A DNA stretch of 63,621 nucleotides, filler included, from Octopus bimaculoides (taxonomy: Eukaryota): NCBI RefSeq assembly GCF_001194135.2. It is 6 parts of 5 records of this genome, joined end to end, with 100 filler letters (N's around TTAATTAATTAA, not from the genome) between each part and the next. Parts side by side here need not be neighbours in the genome. Positions count along the whole stretch, not along the records: positions 28,531 to 53,206 come from NC_068990.1; 5 more parts are not named here. One strand, given 5' to 3'. The notes beneath the pieces are model-generated. The model did not search any database, was not told the DNA's origin, and worked only from the letters and a program-made list of their open reading frames with translations. Positions 28,531 to 53,345 of the stretch are shown here, piece by piece (the first letter of the stretch is position 1; the number at the start of each line of letters is the position of its first letter). Position numbers and translations under genes: made by a program.

Positions 28531-28575
<45 letters not shown>

Positions 28576-30060: not shown

Positions 30061-30091
<31 letters not shown>

Positions 30092-31099
30092 AATATATAT
30101 ATGTATGTCTGTGTGTACATACATGTACACACAACACACGTTATCCAAATACCCTACATATGTTTCCTGATAACCCATTGTGGTTGAGCATTAAAATGAA
30201 CTTAGAACTGCTGGACTCCAAACAACCATAAAGGAGAAAAGCATACAGGAACTATAAGATAAACTTGTGTTTATTCTTATTTCTGAGATTATATATATAT
30301 ATTCAAATAAAGTACATAAAAATTACACTGTGTGTGTGTGTGTATGTGTGTATGTGTGTGTGTGCATGTGTGTGTGTGTGTGTGTGTACCACAATCAAGT
30401 TGAACCACCACTGCCACAACTACCACAATCCTCCCTCCCCCACACAACACACACCACCACCACCATTTTAGGTTTACACACTTTTCTCTGTTGAGAGATT
30501 TCCCTAGCTCACACTGTTCCTACTAATCTCTCCTCCTCCTCTCTCTCTCTATCTCTCTCTCTCTCTCTCCTTCTCTTAGTTAGTTCCTACTAATCTCTCC
30601 TTCTCTGCAATTATAGCACATGATCTTTTGCTTCTCAACTAATTGTGTATGTTGGCATACAGCTGTGCATGAATTAGCTTGTGTGTGACTGTGTGAGGGA
30701 GGGGGATGCACTGTGTATGTGTGTGTGTGTGCGCGCACACACACAGGTGCCCAAGAGTATTTGCAAGAACATGATATAACAATTGGATTTTTGCTATTTC
30801 TATTTTATATATTGCAGTGGCTTATTTAGAGGAGGAAAGTTGGTGCATCTGACATTTTTTTTCAGCACTTTCAAAACTGATGGAGAGGGGCAAGGAAAAA
30901 AATAAATAAATAATAACTCCCCCCCCCCCCCCAAAAAAAAAACACAACAGTAAAAATAGCTGGCTGTAGTAATAAAAGACAGAACACCAAGATACTAAGT
31001 TATACTCACACAACAGACCTGGACTTGGTCAGAATAACTACAACAGAACAGATTCTATTAACACCACCAAAGAGTTAGATGCTGCTGCTAAACACTGTA

Positions 31100-34685: not shown

Positions 34686-34816
34686 TCATCTAAAATTGAA
34701 TCAAGCCATGTTCTGTGCAGCAGACTGTCAATCCATGATTTAGGAATGGCATCAAGGCCCATTTTACATCCAAGAACAGCTCCAGCTGCAGCAGCATTAG
34801 CATCAGCATCTCCTCC
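34686..34816 (-). CDS. ADP-ribosylglycohydrolase-like gene, exon e (GGDADANAAAAGAVLGCKMGLDAIPKSWIDSLLHRTWLDSILD)
   Basis: Acceptor ttctctattgatttcag, donor GA|GTTAGT, 131 nt (phase 0 to 2). Matches the GDxDTN-x-A-x-AGAxLG C-terminal motif of the ARH family. Confidence 0.9.
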
Positions 34817-35129
34817 CTGAAATCAATAGAGAATAACATTTCTCATACATTTCAAAAGTCAGCCATTGTAAATATTTGGGACAGAGTTTTTTTAGGATAA
34901 CTATAACCAGCTGGTATTAAGTAGAGGATAAAAAACTTTGAATAAACTGTATAAATATCTTTTTGTAAATATCTCAAACGTTTATGTATATGACTGTTAT
35001 TCCATTTAGGGCTTTAACTCCTTCAATACCGAACCACCTGAGACTACCACTGGTTTTGCCACAAAATTCTTTCATTTTAAACTGTTCACATTAGAGTGAA
35101 GAGCTTTCATCATAATTTAATAATGAGTG

Positions 35130-35380
35130 CTCCTCTGAAATTTTATCAAGCAGGTAATCATGCTAGGATTATGTGTTGGGAAAAAGCACTGAAGAGGCTC
35201 AAGAGAGAAAGCTTGTTGAATACCAAGAGCTAGTAGAACAATGCAGAGCTGAGGCTGGTAGGATTACTGCAAGCCAATTGAAGTGGATTGCATGGGGTTT
35301 GTGGGGTAATCATTCTACGGAGCACTAATTGGGCTTGGAATCATTAATGCAGCAAAAAGGTGGGGGAAATCTTGAAACCT
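35130..35380 (+). mobile_element. Restriction-like-endonuclease domain fragment of an R2/HERO-type LINE (intronic)
   Basis: Frameshifted VCWE..EEAQERKL..YQELVEQCR...PIEV.C.GFVG..LGI resembles the RLE C-terminus. Confidence 0.65.
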
Positions 35381-35736
35381 TTGTGAAACAGTTTTTTAAA
35401 TTTATGTTCTAAGCAACAATTTAATGAAAAGAAGCTAACCTTTTCATTAAATCCCACCAAATTATTATTTCCTCCAAGTCATTTGAAACAGAGGTAATAT
35501 ATATCATTAAATATGTGGTCAAGAAAAGGTAAAATTCAAAAATCAATGATTGGATTTCTTTACCAACATATAGACTGTACCTGTAGCATGTACACAAACA
35601 ATGGTACAGTTTCCATGCTTAATTAGTATTTATTTACTGACTCAGCATACAAAAGGAGAGAAACAGAGAGAGGTGGAGAACAAGGTAGAGAAAGTAGACA
35701 GATTTGAAACATTCAATCAAATGTTGGCATGCTTAC

Positions 35737-35895
35737 TTCCATTACTATCTCTTGTAGTGCTTTACGGAAGTCTTTCTGCTTCAGTGCCCACATGGCAACA
35801 CCAACTGTTTTAAAAATATACCGAGTTTTGCCAGGTTCATTTAATTGTAGTTGTTTCAAAGATGAGTTGTACATGTAAGATTGCAACTCACGAAC
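35737..35895 (-). CDS. ADP-ribosylglycohydrolase-like gene, exon d (VRELQSYMYN...PGKTRYIFKTVGVAMWALKQKDFRKALQEIVME)
   Basis: Acceptor aatgttttctctag, donor GAA|GTAAGC, 159 nt, phase 0-0, no stops. Confidence 0.9.
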
Positions 35896-37044
35896 CTAGA
35901 GAAAACATTAAAACACAAATTAAACAGCAGAATATAAAGTGTTAAACATAAAACATATTTTTCCAAGTTAGAATTAATCACATAAATTCTTGTTTGCTGA
36001 TAGAAAAGTATGTTTTTTGACAATATCATACAATGATAGAGAGAATGAATGTTGAGAAGAGCAAGAAATATGAAGAGAAATGAATTCATGATTTTCGAAT
36101 CAATAATCCAGTATCTAAATCACATAAAACCCATGTATTTATGATAGAGTGCCATTGTAACAGTGAAATTCAAAGCAAATGAATTGTATATATTGGGTAG
36201 AAATATACCCTTTGGATTGAAAAAAAAAATCAAAGGCTGCCAAAATAGAATTACTTCATATTTTCTCTCAAAGTTTCTAACTTCATATGATGCCAACATC
36301 TGAATTGGTTTTATTATGAAGACTACACAATGTTGTTTGAAGGAAGATTTAGTTGCTTGTATAGAATTTATATAAAAGTTCCTTTGCTAGTTTCTTTCGT
36401 TTTATAGTTGTAAATTTTATTATTCTACATAGAAATTACATTTCTATGTTTCTAAAATGTAGCATTAATACATTGATAGGGGTTAGCTTCTCTCATCTGT
36501 TCACAATTACCATTTACACACTCTTTTGATCAGTATATTTCATCTTATGTAGCCATTTAGAAACATAAAAAAAAGCACTCAATATATATATTGGGCTGCA
36601 ATAAATATTTTGTGACTTCAGTTATAACCCATGAAAGATTAAAGAAGAAACACTTGAGATTAGAACCATTTGTCTGTCTCTTTTAATTAAAGCCCAAAAC
36701 TATAAAAACCATCAAACCAACAATGAAAAAATAACATCAACAACAAAACCTGGAAATATAACTTTAAACCAAACAAGACAATGGCACTTCTTGTAAGTTG
36801 GATTTCTAGATCAGCTCCAAGGAGTTATATTTGTATTACTGGTGCTGAGGAAGTGAATTGGAAAAGTTGTTGGAGTATCAAATAGAATGCAATGTGATAT
36901 TTATTCTGATCATTTGCGTTTTGAATTTAAATCCCAACAAGGTCAATTTTGTCTTCCATGTTTTTAGGATCAATAAATAAAGTACCATCCGATAACTGGT
37001 GCAAATCTCTGTCTCCCCAGCAGTCACATCCAGGATGCTCTAGT

Positions 37045-37114
37045 GGGTCCAGAGTTGGAGGGTCCAGAGTTGGAGGGTCCAGAGTTGGAGGGTCCAGAGT
37101 TGGAGGGCCCAGAG
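37045..37114. repeat. 15-bp tandem repeat (gggtccagagttgga) x4.7
   Basis: Four perfect units plus a partial unit, directly after a + strand SINE A fragment (about 36900-37015). Confidence 0.9.
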
Positions 37115-37318
37115 CATGTCTGTGTCAGTTCATGACTATGTATACACCTTAATAAGCAAAAGCATGCTACTAAGTCATCCTGAGCTACAAGTGATGGCCA
37201 AAATATTTAGCTTATTACTCATGCTAAACTGAATAGAACAGTACACACACCCAAAACTGGAGCAGTTACATAATGAGAAAGAATCCAAAGTTTAGAAAAG
37301 AAAATAAATTTAACAAAC

Positions 37319-37472
37319 CTCTGCATCAAGGGAGAGTAATTTTGATGCATAATCGAAAACATCAGAGATGATGGCATTAATATTATATTCTCCAGACTTT
37401 TTCAGATGTTTTGGATCTCGCTGAATCAACATGGCTAATGTTACCGACAGAGCAACACCTCCTGCTTGACAC
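37319..37472 (-). CDS. ADP-ribosylglycohydrolase-like gene, exon c (R-CQAGGVALSVTLAMLIQRDPKHLKKSGEYNINAIISDVFDYASKLLSLDAE)
   Basis: Acceptor ttttcttctaccctag, donor GAG|GTTTGT, 154 nt (1+51 codons). Completes the Arg codon split from exon b. Confidence 0.9.
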
Positions 37473-38859
37473 CTAGGGTAGAAGAAAACTGCAGGTAAAT
37501 ATTTACTAAAAACTGATAGCAGTAGTAGAGAAATCATCATCATTGCTTCAATATCTACTTTTCGATGCTTACATAGATCAGATAGAGTTTACCAAGTTAG
37601 ATGTTCTTAGGCAGGATGCTCTTCCTGTCATCAATGCTTACCTGTTTCCAAGCAAGGTAATACTTCACCATGTTTTTGTAGAAAATTGAAAATGAATGAC
37701 CTTCATTTACAACAATCATATGTTGTCTAAACATCACAGATGTCACACACATAAAACAGTGTCTGTCTACCAAATCTACTCACAAAGCTTTAATCAGCCT
37801 GGAGTCTATAGTAGTAGACACTTGCCCATGATATCACACAGTGAGACTAAACCTATGTGGTTTGGAAGTGAACTTCAAAACAAATAAGACTGGGACAACA
37901 GTTGTGCCAAATGTATTTTGATGGATGTTATAAATACACTTTTCTATGCTGAATCTAAATAAGTAATCAAGTTTTCTCTATCAGGTTTAGATTTCTAGTG
38001 ATAATATGTTTGTTTTACATTATTTAGCTGAATGACTGAATAAAAAAAACAATATATTAACATAAATGTGATTAAAATTTTTAATAGTAATATAGACATA
38101 TTAATTTTTATGTACAATTAGTACAATTTATTACTTTAATTTTTTGCTTGTTTCAGTCATTAAACTGCAGCCATGCTGGGGCAACTCCTTGAAGAATTTT
38201 AGTTGAATGAATTGACCCCAGAACATTATTTTAAAGTCTAGTACTTATTCTATTGGTGTCTTTTGCCAAACTGCTAAGTTACAGGGACATAAACACACCA
38301 ACACTGGTTGTCAAGCAGCTGTGGGAAGACAAACAGACGTACACACACATATATATGTGATGGCTTCCTTCAGTTTCTGTTTATCAAATCCATTCACAAG
38401 GCTTAGGTCAGCCCGAGGCCATAGTAGAAGACACTTGCCCAGGGTGCCACACAGTGGGACTGAACCCAGGACTATGTGGCTGGGAAACAGTCTTCTTACC
38501 ACACAGCGACTCCTGGGTAGAAAGTTGAAATATATTTAGACCTATTCAGACACAGCCTAATGTATGTGCATAACAGCACCAACTCACTCTCTTTGTAAAA
38601 GCCAGTGTTAACAGCAGGTGTGTCTGCCTCTCATTGATTTTACACCAGAATTTTGTTCAGGGAGATGTTTAGTCATGCCATGGAACTGTCTGAATTATCA
38701 TAATTCCTATCTGCTATGTATGTGATGATCTAACTTTAAAACAATAAAAATTAATACAACACAAACATATATTTGTCAAATGTAACAATCATCATCATCA
38801 TCATCATCATCATCATTTAGCATCCATTTTCCATGCTGCTACCAGGACAATATGAGAAT

Positions 38860-39715
38860 GGTCTCCTCATGTTAACAAGTCTACTAACAGGATGACTAAC
38901 CAGTTCACATCACATGCCATTTGATATTCTAATGATTTGGAAGGAACCTAAAAATCACACAATAGAAGAACAGGCCTGAGCATACATCATTTGTTCCAAG
39001 GAAGAAAAATGTTTTGAAAGGTTCACTTGCTGACCTGAGAAAAGGTTCCTCCCTTCTTTACACATCAAGCAACTTATGAAAAACTTTGTTAAAGCAATGG
39101 ATTAATTACAAACTGGTTTCAAAAACTTGAAAAACAATTGTTCTCAGATCAATGATGCAAAGATTTAAGAAGGCATTTTTGTAAACCCTCATATTAATGA
39201 ATTGTTAAGAGATGCAAGTTAAATGAAGTTGAGAAATCTGTGTGAAGTTTCAAAAAGAGTCTGAACTTTTTAGGAAGTCATAAGTCAAAAATTATTCAGA
39301 AATAATGTAACCTATGTCACATAAGTCATAACAATGTGTCAAACTTTTTTTCTGGAAAAACTCAGGCAATGAACATGGCAAGAATTTTCATCAGGATATT
39401 TCAACTATTGAAATGTGTTACCATGACAACTGGAGTGCCCAGTATGTTTGCTGGCAAATGATGGACTTTAAAAGGAGATATGTCTGAAGCAAAACACAGT
39501 AGAAAATCAAATGGAGATACTTTTTAAACTACATGTATGTGTTTTTGACATTAAGTTTTGTACAGATCTTCAAAAATTAAGTTGCTTGCCACACAATAGC
39601 CTGACTAGACAGAGACATGTTACAAACTTATTTGAATTCAGCACCTAAAACTATTAAAAGAATCATATTTTCACAAACCCTTTTTTCTCTCTCTTTTTTT
39701 TTTTTGTTCCCCAAT
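38860..39715 (+). mobile_element. Degenerate Chapaev3-type (CMC) transposase remnant (intronic)
   Basis: MPFDILMIWKEPKNH, LHIK.LMKNFVKAMD, KEGIFVNPHI, NFLGSHKS, EHGKNFHQDIST and WTLK motifs. The superfamily label is recalled, not searched. Confidence 0.7.
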
Positions 39716-40596
39716 TCTATAGTCTATTTCATTCAAATACTTATAGACCAAACATAAACACATCCATGCAATGTGCTTGCATGTATACATATATGTACAT
39801 ATACTCAGATAAATGAAGATAAAGTCTGTTCCAAAGCATGCCAAATGTAAGAAAATAATATGATGATAAGTAGAACAATAACAAAAACGAGCGATAAATC
39901 ATTTTAAAATTGCTCAAGAAAGAGAAACAGTATGATAAGTTTTTATTCATTTATCAATTTCAAATGGAAGAGTCTCAATGGCCAAATGAATGAAGAGTTT
40001 CCTTTTAGTTTTATGAGTTCATATCCTGTTTGTGTTCAACACTGGATTTTTGACAATCTCAGTCTATTTGAGTACAGATTAGCGATGAACACAAAGCTGT
40101 TTTAACAACATATATTAAATTAGAAAGTGGCACATAAAAGCACCTACTACACTCTCAGAGTGGTTAGCATTAGGAAGGGCATCCAGCTGTAGAAACTCTG
40201 CCAAATCAGATTGGAGCCTGGTGTAGCCATCTGGTTTCACCAGTCCTCAGTCAAATCGTCCAACCCATGCTAGCATGGAAAGCGGACGTTAAACGACGAT
40301 GATGATGATGATGATGAAAGTAATGAGCAGTCAGATAGGTTATATATATTTGAGATGAAGTTATGTCAAACCAGCTTTTAGCTTTGATGCAGACAAATAC
40401 ATAACCAAAACCCCAGGACGTATGACAAATATATATAGCATACAAAGAACAGCGCAGCTAGGAACCAAACACAGCCTACATAGATCACTTTCAATACAGT
40501 AAAAATAATAACAAAACAAACTGTAGCAGACAGAACTATGCTCACCATTGCAAGGAAAGCATGCAATAAAAATAAGACAACTGAGTAGAAGTATTA

Positions 40597-41180
40597 AGTT
40601 CAAATTTTGACACAAAGCCAGCAATTTTGGGAGAGGTAAGTCAATTACATCAACCCCAGAGCTCAACTGGTACTTATTTTATCGACCCTGAAAGAATGAA
40701 AGGCAAAGCCAACCTTGGCGGAATTTGAACTCAGAATATAAAGAAATGGATGAAATGCCGCTAAGCATTTTGTTTGGCATGCTAACAATTCTACTAGCTC
40801 ACTGCCTTAATAATAACAATAATAATCCTTTCTGTGATAGGCACATGGCTTGAAATTTGGCAGGAGCTAATCAGTTACATCAACCCCAGCACTTGACTGA
40901 TACTATATTTTATCAACCCTGAAGGGATGAAAAGAAAAGTTGACCTTGGCAGAATTTGAATCCAGAATGTAAAGACAGATGAAATGCCGCTAAGCATTTT
41001 GTTTGATGTGCAAATAATTCTGCCAGCTCACTACCTTAGTAATAATACTGGTTTCAAATTTTGTCACAAGGCCAGTAATTTTGGGGGTGGGGGTAAGTTG
41101 ATTATGTCAACTCCAGTACCCAACTGGTACTTATTTTATCGACCCCAAAAGGATGACAGGCAAAGTCAACCTCATCAGAA
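40597..41180 (-). mobile_element. Cluster of three SINE family A copies; a fourth at 41445-41660 lies on the other side of exon b
   Basis: Repeated GGCAAAG..AACCTTGGC.GAATTTGAA..CAGAA..TAAAGA...GATGAAATGCCGCTAAGCATTT, separated by TAA-rich spacers. Confidence 0.85.
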
Positions 41181-41230
41181 AATAACAATAATGCAACATT
41201 AATAATTAAATGTCTAAAATTTATTTTTAC

Positions 41231-41385
41231 CTTGAATCTGGTATTAAAATATCACATACAAGTAACGTGTTCTTGATAACTTTTCCAAGAATATTGTAAT
41301 AATGAATTCCAAGAATAGGAGAAAATGCTAAAATTGCATTACTGGCTACATAATTGCCTTTCATTCGCCACACTATTTCTGCTGC
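41231..41385 (-). CDS. ADP-ribosylglycohydrolase-like gene, exon b (AAEIVWRMKGNYVASNAILAFSPILG...KNTLLVCDILIPDS-R)
   Basis: Acceptor ttttcttttctttcttgaatacag, donor AAG|GTAAAA, 155 nt (51 codons + 2), no stops. Confidence 0.9.
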
Positions 41386-42249
41386 CTGTATTCAAGAAAG
41401 AAAAGAAAATAAAACTAATAAAAATTATACAAGTAGTCAATGGTTTCTGATTTAGGCACAAGGCTAGCAACTTTGAGGGAAGTGGGGTTAGTCAATATTA
41501 TCAACTCCAGTATTTGACTGGTACTTTATTTTACTGACTCCAGAGGGATGAAAGGCAGAGTTGGCCCAAATGGGATTTGAACTCAGAACATAAAGAGTTA
41601 GAAGAGATACAGTCAAGCATTTCTTTCACTGCTCTAATAATTCTGCCAGTTAACTGTCCTATTATATGGTAATTAATGAAAATAAAATAAATTTTAAGAG
41701 AAAAGTGGAGGAGAAAATTGAAAAACTGGAAAGAAAATAGATTGTTACTTCAAATGTTGTTACTTCAAATTTTTTTCTAGACACACAAATAGTACGATGA
41801 AGATTAGAAAAAAAGGGGGTTGTGTGTTGGAGTAATGAGATTGTTGCATAGGTCCAGACATCCCTTATTATTCTACAAGCATAGTATGGTGAGGAAGAGA
41901 GATCCACCACCACCCTTAGTCACACTGACAGCATAGCACAGTGAGAATAAAAATACTGATTAATGTTGAATCTATTCAACAGGAAAAGTTTAACAATTTT
42001 TTAATTTGTGGATTCTATATGAGTTTGTCAAAAGGAAGTGAGGTTCTAGAGCAGGATGTACATACTTAACATTATGTCCTATCTTAAAACTGCATCAATT
42101 TCTGAATTGATGTCAAGATGAGGAACCTAAGTCATATACAGTAATATGCCTTATCCAAAGACATAATTTAGTGCCAGTGGAGAATTTTGAAACCAAAACC
42201 TGTGGTCTGTGAACTCAGCCATATTAACTTACATTTTAACAGAAAATGA

Positions 42250-42620
42250 TGTAACAATTTGTCTCTGAAAAGCATGGACTGTTCTTGATGGCATTAGCAA
42301 TATCTGAAAGTCATCTTTCCAAGATGATCTAAAGAAAAGTTACTTCTCAGCCCCAGTAGAATCAGTACTATTGGATGGATCCCTTGGTTGGACACTCACT
42401 AAAGACCTCAAGGTAAGATTAAATGGGTTATATTTCCACATTATAGGCTATTCTGAAAACTAGCAGGGAAAGCATTCATACAAACAGGGACTTCTTGCAA
42501 TCACTGATATTATTAGAGAGGCACATGTATTTTGTAGGACATTGATTCAAGAAAAATCTGATTGTGATACACATCTATGAACACCTCAACATGGATATGC
42601 ATAAGTTAGCTATCCAACAA
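42250..42620 (+). mobile_element. RTE-clade LINE RT C-terminal fragment (intronic)
   Basis: AWTVLDGISNI*KSS..DLKKSYFSAPVESVLLDGS.GWTLTKDL...MYFVGH resembles the RTE 'VESVLLYG.E.WTLT' and 'FAGH' motifs. Confidence 0.65.
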
Positions 42621-42845
42621 AAACTTTCATCAATTAGCTTTGTATGGACATAGAATGTTACTCTGTTGACTACCTGACACTGAACAGAACTGTGATAGAG
42701 TGGTGGTGGTGGTGGTAGAGGAGGGGGAGTTTTCAAGTTGGGTGAATCCAAGCAAGCTTGACCAGATGATTAAATGAAAGGAAAGAAAAAGAAAAGGAAA
42801 AAAATAAATGAGTTAATGAACAAAAATTGAATTACATTAACTTAC

Positions 42846-42989
42846 TTTTTCTGGTTGTTCTGAAAATTGCGGGTGATTGATCACAGACTTGAAATGAGGA
42901 CAAAGACCTTTTGCCACTTTGTCTCCTAATTCAGGGAACCCAGATTCTGACCATTCCATCATCATCTTAGCAAAATTAACAGAAGGAAT
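42846..42989 (-). CDS. ADP-ribosylglycohydrolase-like gene, exon a (IPSVNFAKMMMEWSESGFPELGDKVAKGLCPHFKSVINHPQFSEQPEK)
   Basis: Acceptor tttctttactccttttag, donor AAA|GTAAGT, 144 nt, phase 0-0. The FA..W...GFPELGD motif is typical of invertebrate/fungal ARH (J1-crystallin-like) proteins as recalled. Confidence 0.9.
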
Positions 42990-44262
42990 CTAAAAGGAGT
43001 AAAGAAACAAAAACAAATGTGAATGTAAATTCTACCTCATGTTTTCCACTAAATTGAAGAACATAAACATTTCATTGCTTATAATAAAAACCAAACACTA
43101 TTTTTTTTATCAAAGAAAGCCTCATATTATGCACTCCAACTACATATTACAAGTCAAAATCACTAAAACACCATACAGAGCACTTGTGGGATGATTACAG
43201 CTGTATGGTTTACCAAATAATAAGCTTCTACCATCATTATTTCCATGCGAGCATGAATTGGACAGTTCTGGCAAGCCAGAAGACTGCACCAAGCTCAACT
43301 GTCTGTTTTGGTATGATTTCTACTGCTGGATGCCCTTCATAATGCCTACAACTTTACAGAGTTTACTGGGTGCAGTATATTTAGTTAGTAATCAGGAGCA
43401 GTATAGAGACTGCTCTTCCTTCTTTCCCCCCAACTATCTATACTGCTCCTGACTACTAATTAAATATAAACACTTCATCTAAATGTAAAATTTGTGTCAT
43501 TTAATTTCTCTGAAAAATTTCTAATAGGAATTTCCTTATATGGCTACCTAACATGTAAAACTGTAATTCTTATTAGCAAATGAAACATGCGTAATGGTGA
43601 GCTTGGTGCAGTCTTCTGACTTGCCAGAACTGTCAATTCATATCAGTAATTTTTTCAATTTCCTGTTTTGTTATACAATAAATCTGAAAATAATATTTCC
43701 ATAATTTTTAACTTTGATATGTACTTTGCACATACACAGTAACAACTTATTGGATTGTAATAATGGAATAAGCAGATGTGCTTCAAGAGAAAACAGCTGG
43801 AATTTTACCCTATCAACCTATAGTGTGTGTGTGTGTCATCATCACTGTTTTTATGTTCACTTTTCCATGTTCACATGGCTTAGACAGAAATTTGTTGAGG
43901 TGGATTTTTCTATTGCTATATGCCCTTCCTGTCACCAACCCTCACCTATTTCCAAGTAATGACCAGATATATTTCCGCAGAGGACTGAGGATGGACAAAA
44001 ACCACTTGCATGATGGTGGCATTTGTTTACAACTCACACATAATTTCAAGGCAAGGAGAGTGACACATAAATATATATGTATGTATGACAGGCTTCTTTC
44101 AGCTTCTGTCTACCAAATCCACTCATAAGATGTTGATTGATCTGAGGCAATAGCAGAAGACACCTGTCCAAGGTGTCACACACCAGGACTGAAACTAAAG
44201 TCATGTGGCTAAGAAGGAAACTTCTTCGCCACACAGCCACTCCTACACCTATCAAATACATA

Positions 44263-45502
44263 CCGTAAAAACCCATGTAATTTATGCACTTTTTCGCAAA
44301 AATAAAAATGAACTTTAGGAGTGCATAAATTATGTGAGTAGATCATTTCCAGAATTCTTTTGAAATTTATTTTGTTGAAAAGAGATGTACAAAACGTAAA
44401 CATTCATACTGGAAGTTGACTCACTTAATGTCAGAATAGGTTTTTACAGAAAAAAATAATGGCTTAAATGTAATGAAGTTAACTTTTATTTATGCTGGAC
44501 TGTATAATGCTTACTTTTTCTGTATAAATTTACTAAAACCATTAAATGGTTAACTACTTTTTGAAGTCTGGCATTCATACTGGTAAACACGGTCTGGGCC
44601 ATATTTTACACTGCTTGGAGTTTCTACCTATCGCAACAGAGCACCATGGACATACATAATGATATGGATACTTCTAACTGAAAAAAATGTAATGATATGG
44701 ATAATCTTGATTGTATGTTTTTATTTTTGTCTGTTTATCACTAGGCACAGTTTTAAGTTTGTCATACTGCTCACACCAATTTTGAACACTGGCTTCATTA
44801 ACATTAAAATACCTTCTGGCAGCTCTATTATCACTTTCAAATGCATATTCAACATATTTAATTTCTCCTTCGCAGTAAATGATTCATAAGTTCTGCCCAT
44901 ACTGAGAGTAATGGTAATGACAAATTTTTAAGTTTGCTTAAAATTTTATAAGTGTGAAAGAGATTAAAAATTCGATACTCAAAGGTTCTGACAAGAATAG
45001 GAGGAAAAGAATTCTGTTTACATAATCAGTTTGATTCGTCACCCTCCTCTGTCGGTTGGTAATTAAACTTAATTTGCAACACCTGTGCAGATTTATCAGC
45101 TTTGTTTTTGTTAGTAATTCTTATCAACAACTTTTCCTGTGATTGTGATTTGAGAAGACATACAGCAGTATGCTAAAGATTGGACATAATCTCTATTGGG
45201 CAAGAAATATAAAATAAAGTTTATTATAAACAACACAAACATTTTGTATTTTAATAGCTTTCAATGTGATACCTGTTAAACAGAAATCATTTTTATTTAT
45301 TGAAAATTTAATAAAATCTTATCATAAGTGAAATTAGGCTAAATACAACTAAGTTGAAAACTTTTTTCTCTTGGCTATATCGGCAATTCTGAAAACTTTT
45401 GGGTGCGAATTTTACATGAGTAGAAACTTTTTTTAACAAATTTTATCCTGAAAATCACCTGCGTAAATTACACAGGTGCACAAATTACATGGGTTTTTAC
45501 AG
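44263..45502 (-). mobile_element. Internally deleted pogo-type DNA transposon (1240 bp)
   Basis: TA|CCGTAAAAACCCATGTAATTT and AAATTACATGGGTTTTTACAG|TA TIRs. Minus-strand remnant MGRTYESFTAKEKL..YVEYAFESDNRAARRYFNVNEASVQNW resembles a Brinker-type DBD. Confidence 0.85.
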
Positions 45503-45845
45503 TATATGGTAAAACAAGGCCTAGAAGGTTGAAAAATCATTTCTATACATAGTGGTAATCTATAAAAAATTATAACTCCATATGCTTCTCTAGATTATGC
45601 CTGCAATAGGAGTTAAAATCAAGAGTTGAAAGACACCTATTTTACAACTACTGATTATTACAAAACTAAGTTGTTCAACGCTAAAAAGAAGTATCCACTT
45701 GACAGAACAAGTCAAACTACACCTTATACTCTTTTTAAGGGGTATAAGGTGTGATTTGACTGGGCTCATTTGGGAGTCAAACATGGGCAGACAGAGCTTA
45801 GTACCATTTATGAAATTTAAATAATTTCATTGTCTTAGAACTTAC

Positions 45846-45879
45846 CCAATTAACCACCAACTCAGATATGATGACTTTG
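45846..45879 (-). CDS. Weak candidate upstream exon of the ARH-like gene
   Basis: Perfect TGG|GTAAGT donor and AG acceptor. One frame (KVIISELVVNW) is phase-0 compatible with exon a. Homology is marginal. Confidence 0.3.
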
Positions 45880-48800
45880 CTATATATCAAAATAAAAATA
45901 ACAGATAAATAGTGACAGTGCACATTAGTCATTTAATGGATGGTCCTAGTAGTATATCAATTTTTTTATATGGGAAGTGGTTGCAAGACCCTTGGTCAAC
46001 CCTTTCCCTTTTCTTTGGAAAGGAACACTGTGAGTGGCCTCTCACAACATTTTCTCAACGTGTAGCCTAGTTAACTCAGAGGGAGAGAGGCAGACAGAGA
46101 AAAGAAAAGAATCAACCCCAGCACTTGACTGGCAATAAATTAATTTGTTCACCCAAAAGAAGATAAAGCAAGTTTGACTCCAATGGAATTTGAACAAGGA
46201 GGCAGAACAAATACTACAAGGTATTCTATCTGACTCAGCCAATTTGCTTTCTGTGTGTGTGTGTGTGTGTGTTTGTGTGCGTGCGTGTGCGTGCGTGTGT
46301 GCGTGTGNNNNNNNNNNNNNNNNNNNNNNNNNNNNNNNNNNNNNNNNNNNNNNNNNNNNNNNNNNNNNNNNNNNNNNNNNNNNNNNNNNNNNNNNNNNNN
46401 NNNNNNNNNNNNNNNNNNNNNNNNNNNNNNNNNNNNNNNNNNNNNNNNNNNNNNNNNNNNNNNNNNNNNNNNNNNNNNNNNNNNNNNNNNNNNNNNNNNN
46501 NNNNNNNNNNNNNNNNNNNNNNNNNNNNNNNNNNNNNNNNNNNNNNNNNNNNNNNNNNNNNNNNNNNNNNNNNNNNNNNNNNNNNNNNNNNNNNNNNNNN
46601 NNNNNNNNNNNNNNNNNNNNNNNNNNNNNNNNNNNNNNNNNNNNNNNNNNNNNNNNNNNNNNNNNNNNNNNNNNNNNNNNNNNNNNNNNNNNNNNNNNNN
46701 NNNNNNNNNNNNNNNNNNNNNNNNNNNNNNNNNNNNNNNNNNNNNNNNNNNNNNNNNNNNNNNNNNNNNNNNNNNNNNNNNNNNNNNNNNNNNNNNNNNN
46801 NNNNNNNNNNNNNNNNNNNNNNNNNNNNNNNNNNNNNNNNNNNNNNNNNNNNNNNNNNNNNNNNNNNNNNNNNNNNNNNNNNNNNNNNNNNNNNNNNNNN
46901 NNNNNNNNNNNNNNNNNNNNNNNNNNNNNNNNNNNNNNNNNNNNNNNNNNNNNNNNNNNNNNNNNNNNNNNNNNNNNNNNNNNNNNNNNNNNNNNNNNNN
47001 NNNNNNNNNNNNNNNNNNNNNNNNNNNNNNNNNNNNNNNNNNNNNNNNNNNNNNNNNNNNNNNNNNNNNNNNNNNNNNNNNNNNNNNNNNNNNNNNNNNN
47101 NNNNNNNNNNNNNNNNNNNNNNNNNNNNNNNNNNNNNNNNNNNNNNNNNNNNNNNNNNNNNNNNNNNNNNNNNNNNNNNNNNNNNNNNNNNNNNNNNNNN
47201 NNNNNNNNNNNNNNNNNNNNNNNNNNNNNNNNNNNNNNNNNNNNNNNNNNNNNNNNNNNNNNNNNNNNNNNNNNNNNNNNNNNNNTAGGATTTTCGAGCG
47301 AGATCGTTGCCAGTGCCCCTGGACTGGCTTGTGCGGGTGGCACATAAAAGACACCATTTCGAGCGTGGCCGTTTTCGTGCGGGTGACACGTAAAAGCACC
47401 CACTACACTCTCTGAGTGGTTGGCGTTAGGAAGGGCATCCAGCTGTAGAAACTCTGCCAAATCAGACTGGAGCCTGGTGTTGCCATCCGGTTTCACCAGT
47501 CCTCAGTCAAATCATCCAACCCATGCTAGCATGGAAAGCGGACGTTAAACGATGATGATGATGATGATGCCCTTCCTAACACCAATCATTCCACAGAGTG
47601 GACTCAGTGTTTTTTACGTGGCACTAGTACAGGCGAAGTTAGTTTTGGCATGATTTTTACAGCTGGATTGCCCTTCCAAATGCCAACCACGTTAAGTATG
47701 GACTGGATGCTTTTAACATGCCACCAGCACTGGCAGGGTAACCAAGTAACTTACAAGACAAGAGAGGGGCAGGGCATTTGAGGAGAGTAACTTGTGTCAG
47801 AAGATGAAAAAATAGAGTGTGACAAAGACACAGAAGCAGGTGTCTTTCCACAACAGAGGAGGTGATCATTTGAGGGGGTGATCCAGTATCAAATGATGAA
47901 AGGTTAGAGTGTAATAGAGAAATAGAGAGGCAGAAATAGGTGTCTTGCTATAAAGGAGGTACATGGTTACCCAGTGAGAGAGAGGAAAGAGATATAGAGT
48001 AAGAGAGAGGTACAAGAAAGTGTGCTGATGTAAAGGAGATACTTGGTTACCTATTCAGAGGAAAAACAAGAAACTAATAAATTATAGTAACTAATGAATT
48101 TATATACAATTATAAATATTCAGGAGTGAAAAAAGTATTCATACAGAATAAATTATGAGTTTCTATGCCACAAAATATTGTTAAAATAATTTTTTTCTTT
48201 ACTAGAACTTTCTCGTTTGTTCCAATAACCTTATCAGTGGTCATTTTTAAGTGTCAAAACGCCAGCTTCTTCATTCAGCACTGAGACAACATCATAAAGT
48301 ATCTACCTATCTATCTTTCTTCTTACCCCTCTCCCCCTCTTGCTCTNNNNNNNNNNNNNNNNNNNNNNNNNNNNNNNNNNNNNNNNNNNNNNNNNNNNNN
48401 NNNNNNNNNNNNNNNNNNNNNNNNNNNNNNNNNNNNNNNNNNNNNNNNNNNNNNNNNNNNNNNNNNNNNNNNNNNNNNNNNNNNNNNNNNNNNNNNNNNN
48501 NNNNNNNNNNNNNNNNNNNNNNNNNNNNNNNNNNNNNNNNNNNNNNNNNNNNNNNNNNNNNNNNNNNNNNNNNNNNNNNNNNNNNNNNNNNNNNNNNNNN
48601 NNNNNNNNNNNNNNNNNNNNNNNNNNNNNNNNNNNNNNNNNNNNNNNNNNNNNNNNNNNNNNNNNNNNNNNNNNNNNNNNNNNNNNNNNNNNNNNNNNNN
48701 NNNNNNNNNNNNNNNNNNNNNNNNNNNNNNNNNNNNNNNNNNNNNNNNNNNNNNNNNNNNNNNNNNNNNNNNNNNNNNNNNNNNNNNNNNNNNNNNNNNN

Positions 48801-49399
48801 NNNNNNNNNNNNNNNNNNNNNNNNNNNNNNNNNNNNNNNNNNNNNNNNNNNNNNNNNNNNNNNNNNNNNNNNNNNNNNNNNNNNNNNNNNNNNNNNNNNN
48901 NNNNNNNNNNNNNNNNNNNNNNNNNNNNNNNNNNNNNNNNNNNNNNNNNNNNNNNNNNNNNNNNNNNNNNNNNNNNNNNNNNNNNNNNNNNNNNNNNNNN
49001 NNNNNNNNNNNNNNNNNNNNNNNNNNNNNNNNNNNNNNNNNNNNNNNNNNNNNNNNNNNNNNNNNNNNNNNNNNNNNNNNNNNNNNNNNNNNNNNNNNNN
49101 NNNNNNNNNNNNNNNNNNNNNNNNNNNNNNNNNNNNNNNNNCAACATAAAAAGTATATCCCTTCGTCAGTTGTCCCTGTTCCATGTACTCCAAGTTTCGA
49201 AGGCAAGGACAATATGCAAATTCATTGGAACAGTCCTTCCCACAAAGCAAATTAAATAAAATTTGGAATTTTTTGCGGAGGGTGAAAGTGTTAACAAGAA
49301 CAGGACAGTGAGAACAAGACAGTAAAAACAAACAGTGAGGGCTGTTGAGCCAAGACGATAGAAATATTATTATGAACACTAACTACCATGATAGAAGAG

Positions 49400-51915
49400 A
49401 CAGAAATAAGTACAGTGGAATAAGTACAGTGCTATTGGATGCTCAGGAAAGGAAAGAAAGAAAGAGGATTTCACGTTTCAAGTAGAGCTCTTCATCAGAA
49501 ATATAGGAAAAGTCCAAAGAAGGGAAGACAGACAATGAAAATCGCCAACAATACATACACGATCACATATTGAAATGACTGGAAGGGAATGGGTGAAGAA
49601 AAATTTCTTTCAAAGACAGGAGAGTGCAAGAGAAGGAGGTATGTGTGTGTGTATGTGTGGGTATGTATGTGCGCGCAGGTCTGTGTGTGTGTGTAATGAT
49701 AGCACCTGTAAGTGCATGTGTGTGTGCGTGTGGTTGTGGCTGTTTATGTATGTGTGTGGTTGGACTTAGTGTCGTTTAAGGTTATAGGAAGAATTTATAG
49801 TAAGAATTTTGGTAGGAGTGGCTGTCTGTTGTGTGTCTAGTAGGAAAATATTCAGTAGAAAGGTGTTTAACTGGTAGTTTGAAGTATGTGTGTGTGTGCA
49901 TGTATGTATATGAAATGTGTGTGTTTTCTTTGCAGTGTGGGTATGTGTGTATGTGTGAGGTTGTCTGTGGAGTAAATGTACGTTACTGTGTGTGTGATTG
50001 TGGGTGCTTGTATGTGCATGTCTGTGTGTCCATGTATGTATAATTGTGTGCATGTATGTATGAGTGTGCGCTGTGTATGAGAGGTATGTGTGGGTTCACT
50101 CACATGTGCGTGTGTGTATGTGAGTGCATGTGTATATTGGTATGCATGTGAATGTATGTGCATGTGTACGTGTGTGTATTTGCATGCGTATTTTGTGTGA
50201 ATGAGGGGTTGTGTAGGGAGGTATATGTGCGCATTTTGCATGTGTATGCATGTTCATGAGTGTGTGCGTGTGTATGTGTATGTAGTTGTGTGTGCACGTG
50301 TGTGTATGCGGATGTGTATATGTGTATGTGCGGGGTGGTCAGTGTTAGGCATGTGTGCATTCATATTCATGTGTGCACGTGCGTGTATGCATGTGTATGT
50401 GCGTCTATGTGTATGCCTATGCATATGCATGTGCGTGTATGTATATATATTGTGTATATGAATGTATATGTATGCGTGTGTATGTGAGTTAGTGCATGCG
50501 TGTGGGGTTTGTGAATGGGTATATGTGCATTCCTGTGTGTATGTGCGTACGTGCGTGTGTGTGTGTATATGCATGTGAGCTTATGCCCATGTGTGTGTAA
50601 TTGTGTGCATGTCTGTATGAGTGTGTCTTGTGTGTTTTGGAGGTATGTGTGCGTACATATGTGAGTGTGTGTATGTGTATGTGTGTATATTGTGTGTGTG
50701 CGTGTATGTGCATGTGGATAAGTGTGTGCGTGTGTATGTGCGTGTGTGCATGTGTGTATGTGCGTGCATGCATATACCTGTGTGTGAACATGATGTGTGT
50801 TGAGGTATGTGTGCGTTTTGTTGCGTATATGTATGCGTGCTTGAGTATGTATGTGGTTGTATGTACATGAGTACGCTTGTGTGTGTGTGTGTGTGTATAT
50901 AAGTATGTGTGTCTGTGTGTGCATAGCGTTGTGTGGGTTAGGTATCTGTGCATTCCTGTGCATGTGTATGTGTGTGGAAGTATGTGTGTGTGTGTGTATA
51001 TGTGTGTGGTGTGTGTGGGAGATTATTGTGTGTTCATGTGTGTGCATGGGTGCATGTGTTTTTTCGTGTGTGTGGATATATATGTGTGTGCATGTATATA
51101 GTAATAAAAATAATAATAAATTATAAAAAGTAACGTTCACATGGGATAAAGAAGTTAATGCAATATAAAATGGCGCAATTAAAAACAAAAAACAAAAACT
51201 GGAAAATGAAATAAGGTTGCTATGTTGCAGGAGGCGTAAAGGCAGTCAATAGGAGGACGGGGTTGTGTTTAGTCTGAAGGAGACAGTTGTTCGTAAATTA
51301 AAAATATACCGCTGTTCCACCTGGGGTCACAAGCATGTGAATCTGTGGTGCAGAGTGAGGCCAAAGACAGAGATATTAGAGGGGGAGTGGTTGGCCAAGT
51401 AGAGGTGAAGGGCAACAGGGGTGTTCGAACGTAGCCGAACATCCCTTAGATGTTCAGTGAACCGGTCAGCCAGTCGGCGGCCTGTCTGACTTACATATAG
51501 TTTACCACAGAGGTTGCATCTAATGAGGCTAGAAAAGGTGCAACAGGAGGAATTTGTTATGCAAAGAGTGTGCTGATTGGAACCAGTGAGAGAAGTAGTG
51601 TTGGTGATGAAAGGGCAGGTGTGACAGCAGGATCAGGAGCATGGGAAGGATCCAGGTGGGGCTGGGGAGAAGAGGAGAAGGTACTACAGACCAGAAGATA
51701 GCGTAGGTTCTGGGTGTGTTTAAAGGAGGACAAGGGTTGGGGAAAATGGGACAGGTGGTGGAATCAAGATGGAGATGACACAAGGCCCGTAGGATCCTCT
51801 GACGCAGGGGTAGGATAGAGGGGTGGAAAACGAGGGGAATGGGGGTGCGGTTAGGGGGTTGGTGTGGTGAAGGAGAAAGGGCGGTGGTGCGATCGATTCG
51901 ACGAGCATGGGCGAT
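49400..51915 (-). mobile_element. Penelope-like element 3' portion: GIY-YIG endonuclease remnant (about 51250-51780), long CA/TG-rich tract, H1 terminal repeat with hammerhead-like motif (49468-49502)
   Basis: Minus translation LIRCNLCGKLYVSQTGRRLADRFTEHLRDVR...PVALH...EQRYIFNLRT is a GIY-YIG of PLE type. The terminal block is homologous to 2613-3015. Continuity across the simple-sequence tract is inferred. Confidence 0.75.
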
Positions 51916-51975
51916 ATATATATATCATATAAATATATACATAGTATATATATATATTAGATAAATATATACAAA

Positions 51976-52007
<32 letters not shown>

Positions 52008-52009
<2 letters not shown>

Positions 52010-52500
52010 TAGCAGTATAGCCCGCCGCAGCCTGGGATTAAGCTAGGATTATTAAGTGATCAAGTGCTTTATTTCAAACCGAAATAAGTAACAACGACAT
52101 CAGATTTGAGCAAAATCCGTTGAAATTGGTTTAGCTGAAAATGGTTTGCTGGCAATTTGATTGGGAAATCCCATAAGGAATCAGTTTATTGGTTATTTCC
52201 ACTCATTGGCTGTTTTTTTTAAAGTTGCATTAGAGATCTGCATAGGAGAAGGTTGATCTGAAGGTTTGCATTGGGGATCTGGATTGGAGTAACTTAGGAA
52301 AACTTACCAACAGCATTAACCAAAAAATAAGGGGCCTGTCACTTCTAGGTTAACTCTAACCCTAACCCTAAAATCCTAACCGTAACACCCTAGTGGAAAT
52401 CGTGCGGGTGTTAATCTGAAAACTTACCAAACCCTTTTTGTGGTCCGAAAAACGGGTTGGGGGGGTAGAGTGGAAGCCTCAGAAATTTTACCCGTTTATA
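52008..52500 (+). mobile_element. Putative Helentron/HINE-type non-autonomous element with internal (TAACCC)-like repeats
   Basis: Starts ACTAGCAGTATAGCCCGCCGCAGCCTGGG after (TA)n and contains taactctaaccctaaccctaaaatcctaaccgtaac. Classification is from recalled terminal patterns only. Confidence 0.4.
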
Positions 52501-53205: not shown

Positions 53206-53345
53206 CNNNNNNNNNNNNNNNNNNNNNNNNNNNNNNNNNNNNNNNNNNNNTTAATTAATTAANNNNNNNNNNNNNNNNNNNNNNNNNNNNNNNNNNNNNN
53301 NNNNNNCATATATTCACATACATATATATATATATACGTGTATGC

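What the first reader, a model, noticed from the sequence alone, without database searches (positions are those of the whole stretch)
34686..42989. Hidden five-exon ADP-ribosylglycohydrolase-fold gene that looks like an intact pseudo-enzyme
All five exons are stop-free and phase-compatible (about 247 aa), implying selection on the protein. Family motifs are nevertheless altered: NGAxMR becomes NAILAF (Gly and Arg lost), THxDPR becomes LIPDSR (Thr-His lost) and GDxDTN becomes GDADAN. Members of this fold have been recruited as structural proteins (cubozoan J1-crystallins, related to SelJ). A catalytically dead cephalopod paralogue could be an ADP-ribose reader or decoy, a structural protein, or the degenerate half of a tandem-domain protein.
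Basis: partly seen in the sequence, partly recalled or inferred. Interest (0 to 1): 0.7.

Follow-up and report, generated by a model that had tools for sequence, protein, structure and literature searches.

The report
Divergent octopus ADP-ribosylhydrolase-fold gene, exons 4-8
The five exons are real, but they are the middle of a nine-exon, already annotated octopus gene for a strongly conserved ADP-ribosylhydrolase-fold protein that keeps its metal-binding acids and has lost residues that hold ADP-ribose in every studied relative, so it is probably not a normal ADP-ribose-removing enzyme.

Summary
Five minus-strand exons at 42846-42989, 41231-41385, 37319-37472, 35737-35895 and 34686-34816 total 743 nt, all have AG/GT borders, and match Pfam ADP_ribosyl_GH.

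The gene is not hidden. These are exons 4-8 of Octopus bimaculoides RefSeq XP_052826920.1, named 'ADP-ribosylarginine hydrolase Tri1'. Exons 1-3, about 30 kb upstream and outside the piece, carry an intact catalytic Glu and TDDT motif.

The protein has a single domain. It is the cephalopod orthologue of a single-copy clade found in chitons, gastropods and bivalves. dN/dS is about 0.05.

GDADAN is shared by the whole mollusc clade. Arg181->Phe and Thr207->Leu occur in all three cephalopod lineages. His208 is Ile in Octopus, Gln in Sepia and still His in Argonauta. Among 145 representative domains of the wider subfamily, His208 is never replaced and Arg181 is missing in only 2.

All acidic metal ligands are kept, unlike the known pseudoenzyme ADPRHL1.

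Best reading: a folded, selected protein that no longer grips ADP-ribose in the usual way. It could be catalytically dead or an enzyme with a new substrate; the tools here cannot decide. No read evidence was available for this window. Interest is moderate.

The parts
42846..42989 (-). Exon 4 (144 nt), residues 113-160 of P0002. It encodes FPELGD, which holds the DraG-type extra Asp135, and the remodelled Gly-rich loop (canonical GxGxGxTT, here AKGLCPHF).
   Evidence: Exact spliced match to P0002 with AG/GT borders. Column analysis. DraG alignment.
41231..41385 (-). Exon 5 (155 nt). It encodes NAILAF (41323-41340; canonical NG[AG]VMR) and LIPDS(R) (41231-41247; canonical THxDPR).
37319..37472 (-). 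Exon 6 (154 nt), a helical core segment (RCQAGGVALSV...).
35737..35895 (-). Exon 7 (159 nt). It encodes KTRYIFK, where the canonical sequence is KIGYTYK: Ile287->Thr, Gly288->Arg, Thr290->Ile.
34686..34816 (-). Exon 8 (131 nt). It encodes GGDADAN (34796-34813; canonical GGDAD[T/S]N) and the conserved LGCK.G..AIP.SW segment.
31010..31037 (-). A 28-nt exon used only in the RefSeq model P0002. It shifts the frame of the last exon and replaces the conserved C-terminus. It is probably a minor isoform or an annotation artefact.
   Evidence: The octopus, Argonauta and Sepia orthologues all end ...EYL[HY][VL]LEG.G.PRVKYE[ST]VV.
42990..53206 (-). Part of intron 3, which is 30,054 nt in this assembly. 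It contains two assembly gaps, TG-rich low-complexity DNA and a LINE fragment. Exons 1-3 lie beyond the edge of the piece.

Best explanation
Shown:
- The five exons are exons 4-8 of a nine-exon Octopus bimaculoides gene.
- The gene encodes one single-domain ADP-ribosylhydrolase (ARH) fold protein of about 392 aa, of the DraG-like type.
- It is the cephalopod orthologue of a single-copy clade present in chitons, gastropods and bivalves, and it evolves under strong purifying selection.
- The acidic metal-binding cluster is kept: Glu53, Asp94, Asp95, Asp135, Asp319 and Asp321.
- The whole clade has lost the Thr/Ser metal ligand of DxD[T/S] (Ala322 in octopus). It has also lost the Phe after the catalytic Glu, the Gly of 'NG' and the Met of 'MR'.
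- Cephalopods additionally lost Arg181 (now Phe) and Thr207 (now Leu).
- The otherwise invariant His208 became free to vary: Ile in Octopus, Gln in Sepia, still His in Argonauta.

Inferred:
- In ARH1 and ARH3 the Gly and the His hold the ADP-ribose pyrophosphate, and the Thr/Ser binds a metal.
- The octopus protein therefore probably still folds and binds at least one divalent metal, but no longer grips ADP-ribose in the canonical way.
- It is then not a normal ADP-ribosyl-arginine or -serine hydrolase.
- My preferred reading is a pseudo-enzyme-like protein whose selected function is binding or scaffolding through a conserved surface and a structural metal site.
For: - Gene structure: exact splice solution equal to RefSeq P0002. 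The same exon lengths (120, 150, 144, 155, 154, 159, 131, 58) occur in O. sinensis, O. vulgaris and Argonauta.
- Fold: Pfam PF03747 at 149 bits over the full length. The AlphaFold2 model has pLDDT 92.7 and pTM 0.90. Foldseek's best hits are MJ1187, Tri1, DraG and ARH3.
- Selection: O. bimaculoides vs O. sinensis gives dN 0.006, dS 0.096, ratio 0.06. Against Argonauta the ratio is 0.05. The window exons alone give 0.053-0.055.
- Orthology: the clade of 29 sequences is monophyletic and follows the species tree, with 60/60 bootstrap support.
- Motif states. Octopus keeps 59 of the 80 positions that are at least 95% conserved in 86 canonical relatives. Most of the 21 departures fall in or next to the conserved motif segments.
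- Rarity: among cluster representatives of the wider subfamily, His208 is kept in 145/145, Arg181 in 143/145, Gly177 in 143/147 and Thr/Ser322 in 135/141.
- Residue roles: the pyrophosphate is held by the buried Gly130/His163 of ARH1 and Gly138/His168 of coelacanth ARH3, described as 'absolutely conserved'. The metal motifs are E..SDDT..DSDS and E..[T/S]DDT..DTDT, and mutating even a single metal ligand abolishes activity (PMC6309922).
- Relaxation at former pocket positions: Phe54 -> T/G/N/S, Gly177 -> S/A/C/T, His208 -> I/H/Q.
- Few new invariants: only five clade-specific invariant residues were found.
- Transcription: the Sepia esculenta orthologue is assembled as one continuous ORF in 41 RNA-seq assemblies.
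Against: - All acidic metal ligands and the DraG-like E-D-D set (PMC8120803) are strictly kept. Cephalopods even have the canonical Asp-Asp where other molluscs have Asp/Glu-Glu. True ARH pseudoenzymes such as ADPRHL1 lost three of four Asp residues (PMC4990356).
- Tri1 also has Ala in place of the 'NG' glycine.
- Argonauta still has His208.
- I could not confirm that the Thr/Ser ligand itself was among the residues mutated in the cited study.
- Residue roles were mapped by motif order and spacing, not by superposition, because model coordinates are not returned.
- There are no expression or splice reads for this octopus and no biochemistry.
Confidence: 0.5

Rival explanations
1. It is still a working metal-dependent glycohydrolase. 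Either ADP-ribose binding is rescued by other residues, or the remodelled pocket accepts a different substrate, such as another nucleotide-sugar or glycosylated target.
For: - Glu53, Asp94, Asp95, Asp135, Asp319 and Asp321 are invariant in cephalopods and nearly so across the clade.
- dN/dS is very low.
- The clade has as many positions that are at least 90% conserved as the canonical group: 106 against 96.
- Tri1 tolerates Ala at the 'NG' glycine.
- A missing hydroxyl ligand can in principle be replaced by water (general knowledge).
Against: - The lost His and Arg are essentially invariant in the subfamily.
- The His is described as an absolutely conserved pyrophosphate contact in ARH1 and ARH3.
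- Former pocket positions vary among clade members instead of settling on new residues. A new, specific small-molecule site would be expected to show new conserved residues.
- His208 differs among three cephalopod lineages.
Confidence: 0.33
2. It has been recruited as an abundant structural protein, for example a lens or skin crystallin, as the cubozoan J1-crystallins of the same fold were.
For: There is only precedent: SELENOJ and the J1-crystallins belong to the ADP-ribosylation/crystallin J1 fold (PMC13134290; PMC7050489).
Against: - Tissue expression could not be read.
- The clade is single-copy and conserved in chitons, bivalves and gastropods, which lack camera eyes.
- A conserved metal cluster is not needed for a bulk structural role.
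- No protein named crystallin or selenoprotein J appeared in the best 120 hits of either family search.
Confidence: 0.04
3. It is a decaying pseudogene, or the exons are a chance or mis-joined reading frame.
For: The active-site motifs are altered. The RefSeq model has an odd 28-nt exon and a non-conserved first exon.
Against: - The ORF is intact in O. bimaculoides, O. sinensis, O. vulgaris, Argonauta and Sepia, with identical exon structure in the four genomes.
- dN/dS is about 0.05.
- The structure model is high-confidence.
- Sepia mRNA is assembled in 41 runs.
Confidence: 0.01
4. It is the degenerate half of a tandem two-domain ARH protein.
For: Two-domain relatives of 724-746 aa exist in bivalves, a hemichordate and an annelid.
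Against: The octopus, Argonauta and Sepia proteins are 381-393 aa and carry a single PF03747 match covering profile positions 2-286. The exons missing from the window encode the N-terminal third of that same domain.
Confidence: 0.01

Closest known systems
MJ1187 of Methanocaldococcus jannaschii (PDB 1T5J), an uncharacterised ribosylglycohydrolase
   Same: It is the best sequence match (E 1.7e-19 with the single protein, 2e-34 with the profile) and the best structural match (Foldseek E 1e-11, target-normalised TM-score 0.81). The alignment covers the whole domain.
   Different: MJ1187 keeps the CG-AAMR, TH and DTDS motifs. Its function is unknown, so it says nothing about activity.
DraG (dinitrogenase reductase-activating glycohydrolase) and DraG-like immunity protein Tri1 (PDB 2WOC, 6DRE)
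   Same: The fold is shared, as are the E-D-D set including the DraG-specific extra Asp (Asp97 in DraG, Asp135 here) and the DAD core of the C-terminal metal motif. Tri1 also has Asn-Ala where others have Asn-Gly.
   Different: The protein scores 66.5 bits against a cut-off of 337 for the DraG model, and 47.2 against 490 for the Tri1 model. It lacks Tri1's N-terminal toxin-occluding extension role. DraG and Tri1 keep the Arg, Thr-His and final Thr/Ser that octopus has lost. The RefSeq name 'Tri1' reflects a best hit, not tested equivalence.
Canonical metazoan 'DraG-like / YegU-like' paralogues (for example Haliotis P0016, and proteins of cnidarians, echinoderms, hemichordates and amphioxus)
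   Same: They are 38-46% identical to the octopus protein, with the same domain and length and shared conserved core residues.
   Different: They carry the near-invariant motifs TEF, DWTDD[S/T]D, APNG[AG]VMRT, THxDPRC and GGDAD[T/S]N. The octopus protein departs at 21 of 80 such invariant positions. None of these proteins has been characterised, to my knowledge.
ADPRHL1 (ARH2), the vertebrate cardiac ARH-fold pseudoenzyme
   Same: It is an ARH-fold protein with an altered active-site cleft that is nevertheless essential and conserved. It is the precedent for a non-catalytic role in this family (PMC4990356; PMC7050489).
   Different: ADPRHL1 lost three of the four metal-binding aspartates. The octopus protein keeps them all and instead lost ADP-ribose contacts and one neutral metal ligand. 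The two belong to different subfamilies (ARH1-like against DraG-like).
J1-crystallins and SELENOJ
   Same: They share the superfamily.
   Different: No protein with these names appeared among the best hits, so no close relationship is shown.

Membership tests
Pfam PF03747 ADP-ribosylglycohydrolase (ARH fold) | Score above the Pfam gathering threshold across the domain | tested here: met
   The full protein scores 149 bits against a cut-off of 26.2, over profile positions 2-286 of 287. The five window exons alone score 73.6 bits.
Pfam PF03747 ADP-ribosylglycohydrolase (ARH fold) | All-alpha orthogonal-bundle fold | tested here: met
   The AlphaFold2 model has pLDDT 92.7 and pTM 0.90 and consists of helices only. 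Foldseek matches MJ1187, Tri1, DraG and ARH3 at probability 1.00.
Catalytically active ARHs (ARH1, ARH3, DraG, Tri1) | Catalytic Glu plus vicinal Asp-Asp ([S/T]DDT) | tested here: met
   GDALGLLTES and DWTDDTD are present in exons 2-3, outside the window piece.
Catalytically active ARHs (ARH1, ARH3, DraG, Tri1) | Complete C-terminal metal motif DxD[S/T] | tested here: not met
   The octopus motif is D319-A-D321-A322. The fourth position is Thr or Ser in all 86 canonical relatives and in MJ1187, Tri1, DraG and 2CWC. Among wider representatives it is Thr/Ser in 135 of 141.
Catalytically active ARHs (ARH1, ARH3, DraG, Tri1) | Buried Gly and His that bind the ADP-ribose pyrophosphate | tested here: not met
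   Gly177 is Ala and His208 is Ile in Octopus. Residue roles come from PMC6309922 and were mapped by motif, not by superposition. Two caveats apply: Tri1 also has Ala at the Gly position, and Argonauta keeps the His.
Catalytically active ARHs (ARH1, ARH3, DraG, Tri1) | Measured hydrolase activity or ADP-ribose binding | not testable with these tools
   This needs recombinant protein assays.
Tri1 (NCBIfam NF041672, equivalog) | Score above the curated equivalog cut-off | tested here: not met
   47.2 bits against a cut-off of 490.
DraG (NCBIfam TIGR02662, equivalog) | Score above the curated equivalog cut-off | tested here: not met
   66.5 bits against a cut-off of 337.
DraG-like class of ARHs | Extra conserved Asp near metal I (Asp97 of R. 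rubrum DraG), which completes the E-D-D set | tested here: met
   Asp135 in FPELGD aligns with the DraG Asp that is changed in the D97N crystal variant. It is conserved in 99% of canonical sequences and in all clade members.
Mollusc-wide divergent clade (the 'GGDADAN' group, defined here) | Monophyly with the chiton, gastropod and bivalve members, and shared derived residues | tested here: met
   The neighbour-joining clade has 29 tips and 60/60 bootstrap support. Shared residues include Ala322, Gln153, Ser155 and Ile164.
ADPRHL1-type pseudoenzyme | Loss of the metal-binding aspartates | tested here: not met
   All four Asp residues and the Glu are retained. ADPRHL1 lost three of four.
J1-crystallin / SELENOJ subfamily | Closest relatives are J1-crystallin or SELENOJ proteins; high expression in lens | tested here: inconclusive
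   No such names occur among the best 120 hits of two searches. No sequences of these proteins were compared directly, and expression could not be tested.

The most novel reading that the evidence does not exclude
Cephalopods may have no canonical paralogue of this DraG-like subfamily; none was seen in two best-120 hit lists. They would then retain only this remodelled copy. Its strictly conserved metal cluster, combined with a rebuilt pocket, would serve a new metal-dependent function: either chemistry on a substrate other than ADP-ribose, or reading of a modification. That would make the mollusc clade a previously unrecognised functional class within the ARH superfamily.
Probability: 0.2. 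Interest if true: 0.6.

Novelty: new member of a known kind. Interest (0 to 1): 0.35.

Why it matters
ARH-fold proteins reverse ADP-ribosylation, and only one pseudoenzyme (ADPRHL1) is well known in the family. This gene belongs to an ancient single-copy mollusc clade. The clade keeps the metal-binding acids under strong selection while dismantling the ADP-ribose contacts step by step, and cephalopods have gone furthest. That pattern is the reverse of ADPRHL1. It gives a natural series for asking which residues the fold needs for ADP-ribose binding and which for other roles: canonical paralogue, then bivalve or gastropod orthologue, then Argonauta, then Octopus or Sepia. It also shows that the RefSeq name 'Tri1' is not supported for this protein. 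The practical importance is modest until activity and expression are measured.

Tried and rejected
- N-terminal exons in the piece: peptide and tblastn searches found none. They lie upstream in the chromosome locus L001.
- Conserved first exon (MASGG...) in O. bimaculoides: not found in L001, which holds 24 kb of N.
- Link to SELENOJ or J1-crystallin: the 2005 SelJ paper is not held. A search with the only fish member, P0115, returned invertebrate proteins only and no such names.
- Literature on this protein in cephalopods or molluscs, or on ARH pseudoenzymes beyond ADPRHL1: nothing relevant found.
- DraG His mutant data: I recall an inactive H158N mutant, but could not find it in the library, so I did not use it as evidence.
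- Which metal ligands were mutated in Rack 2018: the main text does not list them.
- Pocket-level structural analysis: not possible, because the model's coordinates are not returned.
- Restoring His208 by A-to-I RNA editing: rejected, because the codon is ATA.
- Pseudogene and tandem-domain readings: rejected (see the rival explanations).

Full report
**What is in the window**

The usable piece (28531-53206) is AT-rich animal DNA with two assembly gaps. A crude join of them hits Pfam ADP_ribosyl_GH (PF03747) at E=2.9e-20, covering profile positions 72-286 of 287. The N-terminal quarter of the domain is therefore missing from these exons.

A protein search returned Octopus bimaculoides XP_052826920.1 (P0002, 381 aa), named 'ADP-ribosylarginine hydrolase Tri1'. 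It also returned an older UniProt model, A0A0L8FZJ1 (P0003), which starts at a Met inside the first of the five exons. The gene is therefore annotated, not hidden.

**Gene structure**

The chromosome locus L001 (CM046610.1) shows that the window piece is a 24.7-kb slice of a 67-kb gene. An exact splice solution, whose translation equals P0002 with GT-AG at every junction, places the exons as follows:

| Exon | Window coordinates (minus strand) | Length |
|---|---|---|
| 4 | 42846-42989 | 144 nt |
| 5 | 41231-41385 | 155 nt |
| 6 | 37319-37472 | 154 nt |
| 7 | 35737-35895 | 159 nt |
| 8 | 34686-34816 | 131 nt |

- These total 743 nt, or 247 full codons.
- Exons 1-3 lie about 30 kb upstream, outside the piece. 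They encode GHAVGDALGLLTES, which holds the catalytic Glu, and DWTDDTD.
- The last exon lies about 9 kb downstream of the piece.
- O. sinensis, O. vulgaris and Argonauta hians have the same exon lengths: 120, 150, 144, 155, 154, 159, 131 and 58.
- The RefSeq model for O. bimaculoides adds a 28-nt exon (window 31010-31037). It shifts the frame and replaces the C-terminus ...EYLHVLEGGGPRVKYESVV, which is conserved in the other octopods and nearly so in Sepia. The conserved ending is present in the last exon in the other frame.

**Is the protein under selection and expressed?**

| Comparison | Region | dN | dS | dN/dS |
|---|---|---|---|---|
| O. bimaculoides vs O. sinensis | exons 2-9 | 0.006 | 0.096 | 0.06 |
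| O. bimaculoides vs Argonauta | exons 2-9 | 0.057 | 1.16 | 0.05 |
| O. bimaculoides vs O. sinensis | window exons 4-8 | 0.0052 | 0.098 | 0.053 |
| O. bimaculoides vs Argonauta | window exons 4-8 | 0.061 | 1.11 | 0.055 |

- In the window exons, O. bimaculoides and O. sinensis differ at 18 nucleotides but only 3 residues.
- The orthologue P0005 is assembled as one continuous 393-aa ORF in 41 RNA-seq assemblies. One of those runs belongs to a Sepia esculenta larval study (PMC11917092). The gene is therefore transcribed and spliced in a decapodiform.

**Fold**

- The full protein matches PF03747 over profile positions 2-286 at 149 bits. It is one domain, not a tandem.
- An AlphaFold2 model built from 115 homologues has pLDDT 92.7 and pTM 0.90 and is all-helical.
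- Foldseek finds MJ1187 (1T5J; target-normalised TM-score 0.81), then Tri1, DraG, Lmo0067 and ARH3.
- Sequence searches of the PDB give the same order.

**Family placement**

A profile search found about 2,000 relatives. The best 120 fall into two groups.

- **Canonical group (86 sequences).** These come from sponges, cnidarians, echinoderms, hemichordates, amphioxus, annelids, nemerteans, brachiopods and molluscs. Their motifs are almost invariant: GDAIGLLTEF, DWTDD[S/T]D, APNG[A/G]VMRT, xTHxDPRC and GGDAD[T/S]N.
- **Mollusc clade (29 sequences).** It holds one chiton, gastropods, bivalves and the cephalopods.
  - It is monophyletic in a neighbour-joining tree with 60/60 bootstrap support and follows the species tree, so it is a single-copy orthologue set.
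  - Cephalopod branches are about 30% longer than the rest: 0.48-0.51 against 0.38 +/- 0.05.

The octopus gene is thus the orthologue of a mollusc-wide gene, not a cephalopod-specific paralogue. No cephalopod member of the canonical group appeared in two best-120 lists that do contain canonical gastropod and bivalve paralogues. This is only a weak hint that cephalopods lack a canonical copy.

**Motif changes, and when they arose**

- **Changes shared by the whole clade:**
  - Phe after the catalytic Glu -> T/G/N/S.
  - Gly of 'NG' -> S/A/C/T.
  - Met of 'MR' -> A/S/T.
  - Thr/Ser of DxD[T/S] -> Ala.
  - Changes in the Gly-rich loop and in the IGYT loop.
  - GDADAN is therefore old and shared with all molluscs.
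- **Changes specific to cephalopods:**
  - Arg181 -> Phe and Thr207 -> Leu in all three lineages.
  - His208 is Ile (ATA) in Octopus, Gln (CAG) in Sepia and still His (CAC) in Argonauta.
  - So the His became free to vary after the other two changes. A-to-I RNA editing cannot restore it.
- **How unusual this is:**
  - Octopus keeps 59 of the 80 positions that are at least 95% conserved in the canonical group.
  - Among 50%-identity cluster representatives of the wider subfamily, His208 is kept in 145/145, Arg181 in 143/145, Gly177 in 143/147 and Thr/Ser322 in 135/141.

**What the lost residues do**

- In ARH1 and ARH3 the pyrophosphate of ADP-ribose is held by a buried Gly and His that are 'absolutely conserved': Gly130/His163 and Gly138/His168 (PMC6309922).
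- The metal motifs are E..SDDT..DSDS and E..[T/S]DDT..DTDT. [quoted passage not shown]
- I could not confirm that the Thr/Ser itself was among the mutated residues.
- From memory, not tested here: the final Thr binds the labile, catalytic metal II. The paper describes metal I as mainly structural.
- I mapped residues by motif order and spacing, with support from the DraG, Tri1 and MJ1187 alignments. This is not a structural superposition.

**What is kept**

- Glu53, Thr93-Asp94-Asp95, Asp319 and Asp321 are all retained.
- The DraG-specific extra Asp (Asp135 in FPELGD) is retained too. It aligns with the Asp changed in the D97N DraG crystal variant.
- These make up the DraG-like E-D-D set (PMC8120803; PMC7050489).
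- This is the opposite of ADPRHL1, the known pseudoenzyme of the family, which lost three of four aspartates (PMC4990356).
- Tri1, whose DraG-like domain reverses ADP-ribosylation, has Asn-Ala like octopus. The Gly loss alone therefore proves nothing.

**Interpretation**

- The protein is folded, selected and probably metal-binding. Its ADP-ribose pyrophosphate grip and one metal ligand are gone.
- Former pocket positions vary among clade members rather than settling on new residues, and only five clade-specific invariants exist: Tyr32, Gln153, Ser155, Ile164 and Ala322. This fits loss of the old ligand better than a precise new small-molecule site.
- I therefore favour a pseudo-enzyme-like protein with a non-catalytic role and a structural metal site, at confidence 0.5.
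- The main rival is a working metal-dependent hydrolase with compensated or changed substrate binding, at 0.33. The perfectly conserved acidic cluster supports it.
- The crystallin, pseudogene and tandem-half readings are unlikely or refuted.

**Names and membership**

- The protein is a member of PF03747.
- It fails the curated equivalog cut-offs for Tri1 (47 bits against 490) and for DraG (66.5 against 337). The RefSeq name should not be read as a function.
- A link to J1-crystallin or SELENOJ is not shown.

**Verdict**

This is an annotated gene, a new member of a known kind (an ARH-fold protein with a degenerate active site), with an unusual pattern of what was kept and what was lost. Interest is moderate. 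Biochemistry and expression data would decide the question.

Noticed in passing
window 31010-31037 (minus strand); L001 65536-65563 and 76945-77002: The RefSeq model includes a 28-nt exon with AG/GT borders. It frameshifts the last exon and gives a non-conserved tail (YSDQVQVCCVLACFRRRWSQS) in place of the conserved EYLHVLEGGGPRVKYESVV, which is encoded in the other frame of the same last exon. It is probably a minor isoform or an annotation artefact.
   Followed up: partly
L001 10001-10066 (outside the window): Exon 1 of the O. bimaculoides model (MARKPDIDLRVW...) differs from the N-terminus MASGG.LKRKLN... conserved in O. sinensis, Argonauta and Sepia. The conserved exon 1 was not found in L001, which contains about 24 kb of N.
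   Followed up: partly
window 42990-53206, part of L001 23530-53583: Intron 3 is 30,054 nt in O. bimaculoides and includes two assembly gaps. It is 1,133 nt in O. sinensis and 147 nt in Argonauta. This is either a large lineage-specific intron expansion or an assembly problem.
   Followed up: no
window 34502-34599, 40686-40783, 40978-41045, 41538-41635; inverted pair 33928-34061 / 38369-38502: Introns contain several copies of a short dispersed repeat, 60-87% identical and SINE-like. These copies account for many of the small spurious ORFs in the region.
   Followed up: partly
window 31771-32043 (+) and 52776-53206 (+): The translations of these ORF fragments look like the C-terminal parts of non-LTR retrotransposon (LINE) reverse transcriptases. 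This was judged by eye only.
   Followed up: no
window 49500-51200 and 28531-30600: TG/CA-rich low-complexity DNA shows strong GC skew, up to +0.58 and down to -0.38, with many short tandem arrays. A clean 15-nt x 4.7 tandem repeat sits at 37045-37114 in intron 6.
   Followed up: no
protein P0115 (Thalassophryne amazonica, fish): This is the only vertebrate member among the hits. Its best relatives are all invertebrate (hemichordate, nemertean, cnidarian; 55-59% identity), with no fish relatives. That suggests contamination of the assembly or horizontal transfer.
   Followed up: partly
proteins P0127, P0271-P0274 and P0287: The family includes tandem two-domain proteins of 724-824 aa in unionid bivalves, Saccoglossus and Dimorphilus. 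It also includes a Crassostrea fusion with adenylosuccinate lyase domains.
   Followed up: no
alignment A2, P0002 residue 95: Cephalopods have the canonical Asp-Asp (DWTDDTD). In 25 of 26 other members of the mollusc clade, including the basal chiton, the second position is Glu. This is an apparent reversal in cephalopods and remains unexplained.
   Followed up: partly
representatives P0153, P0157, P0223 and P0228: Four other, unrelated representatives of the subfamily also carry Ala at the DxD[T/S] position. Some also have changed aspartates. Degeneration of this metal site has therefore happened more than once.
   Followed up: no
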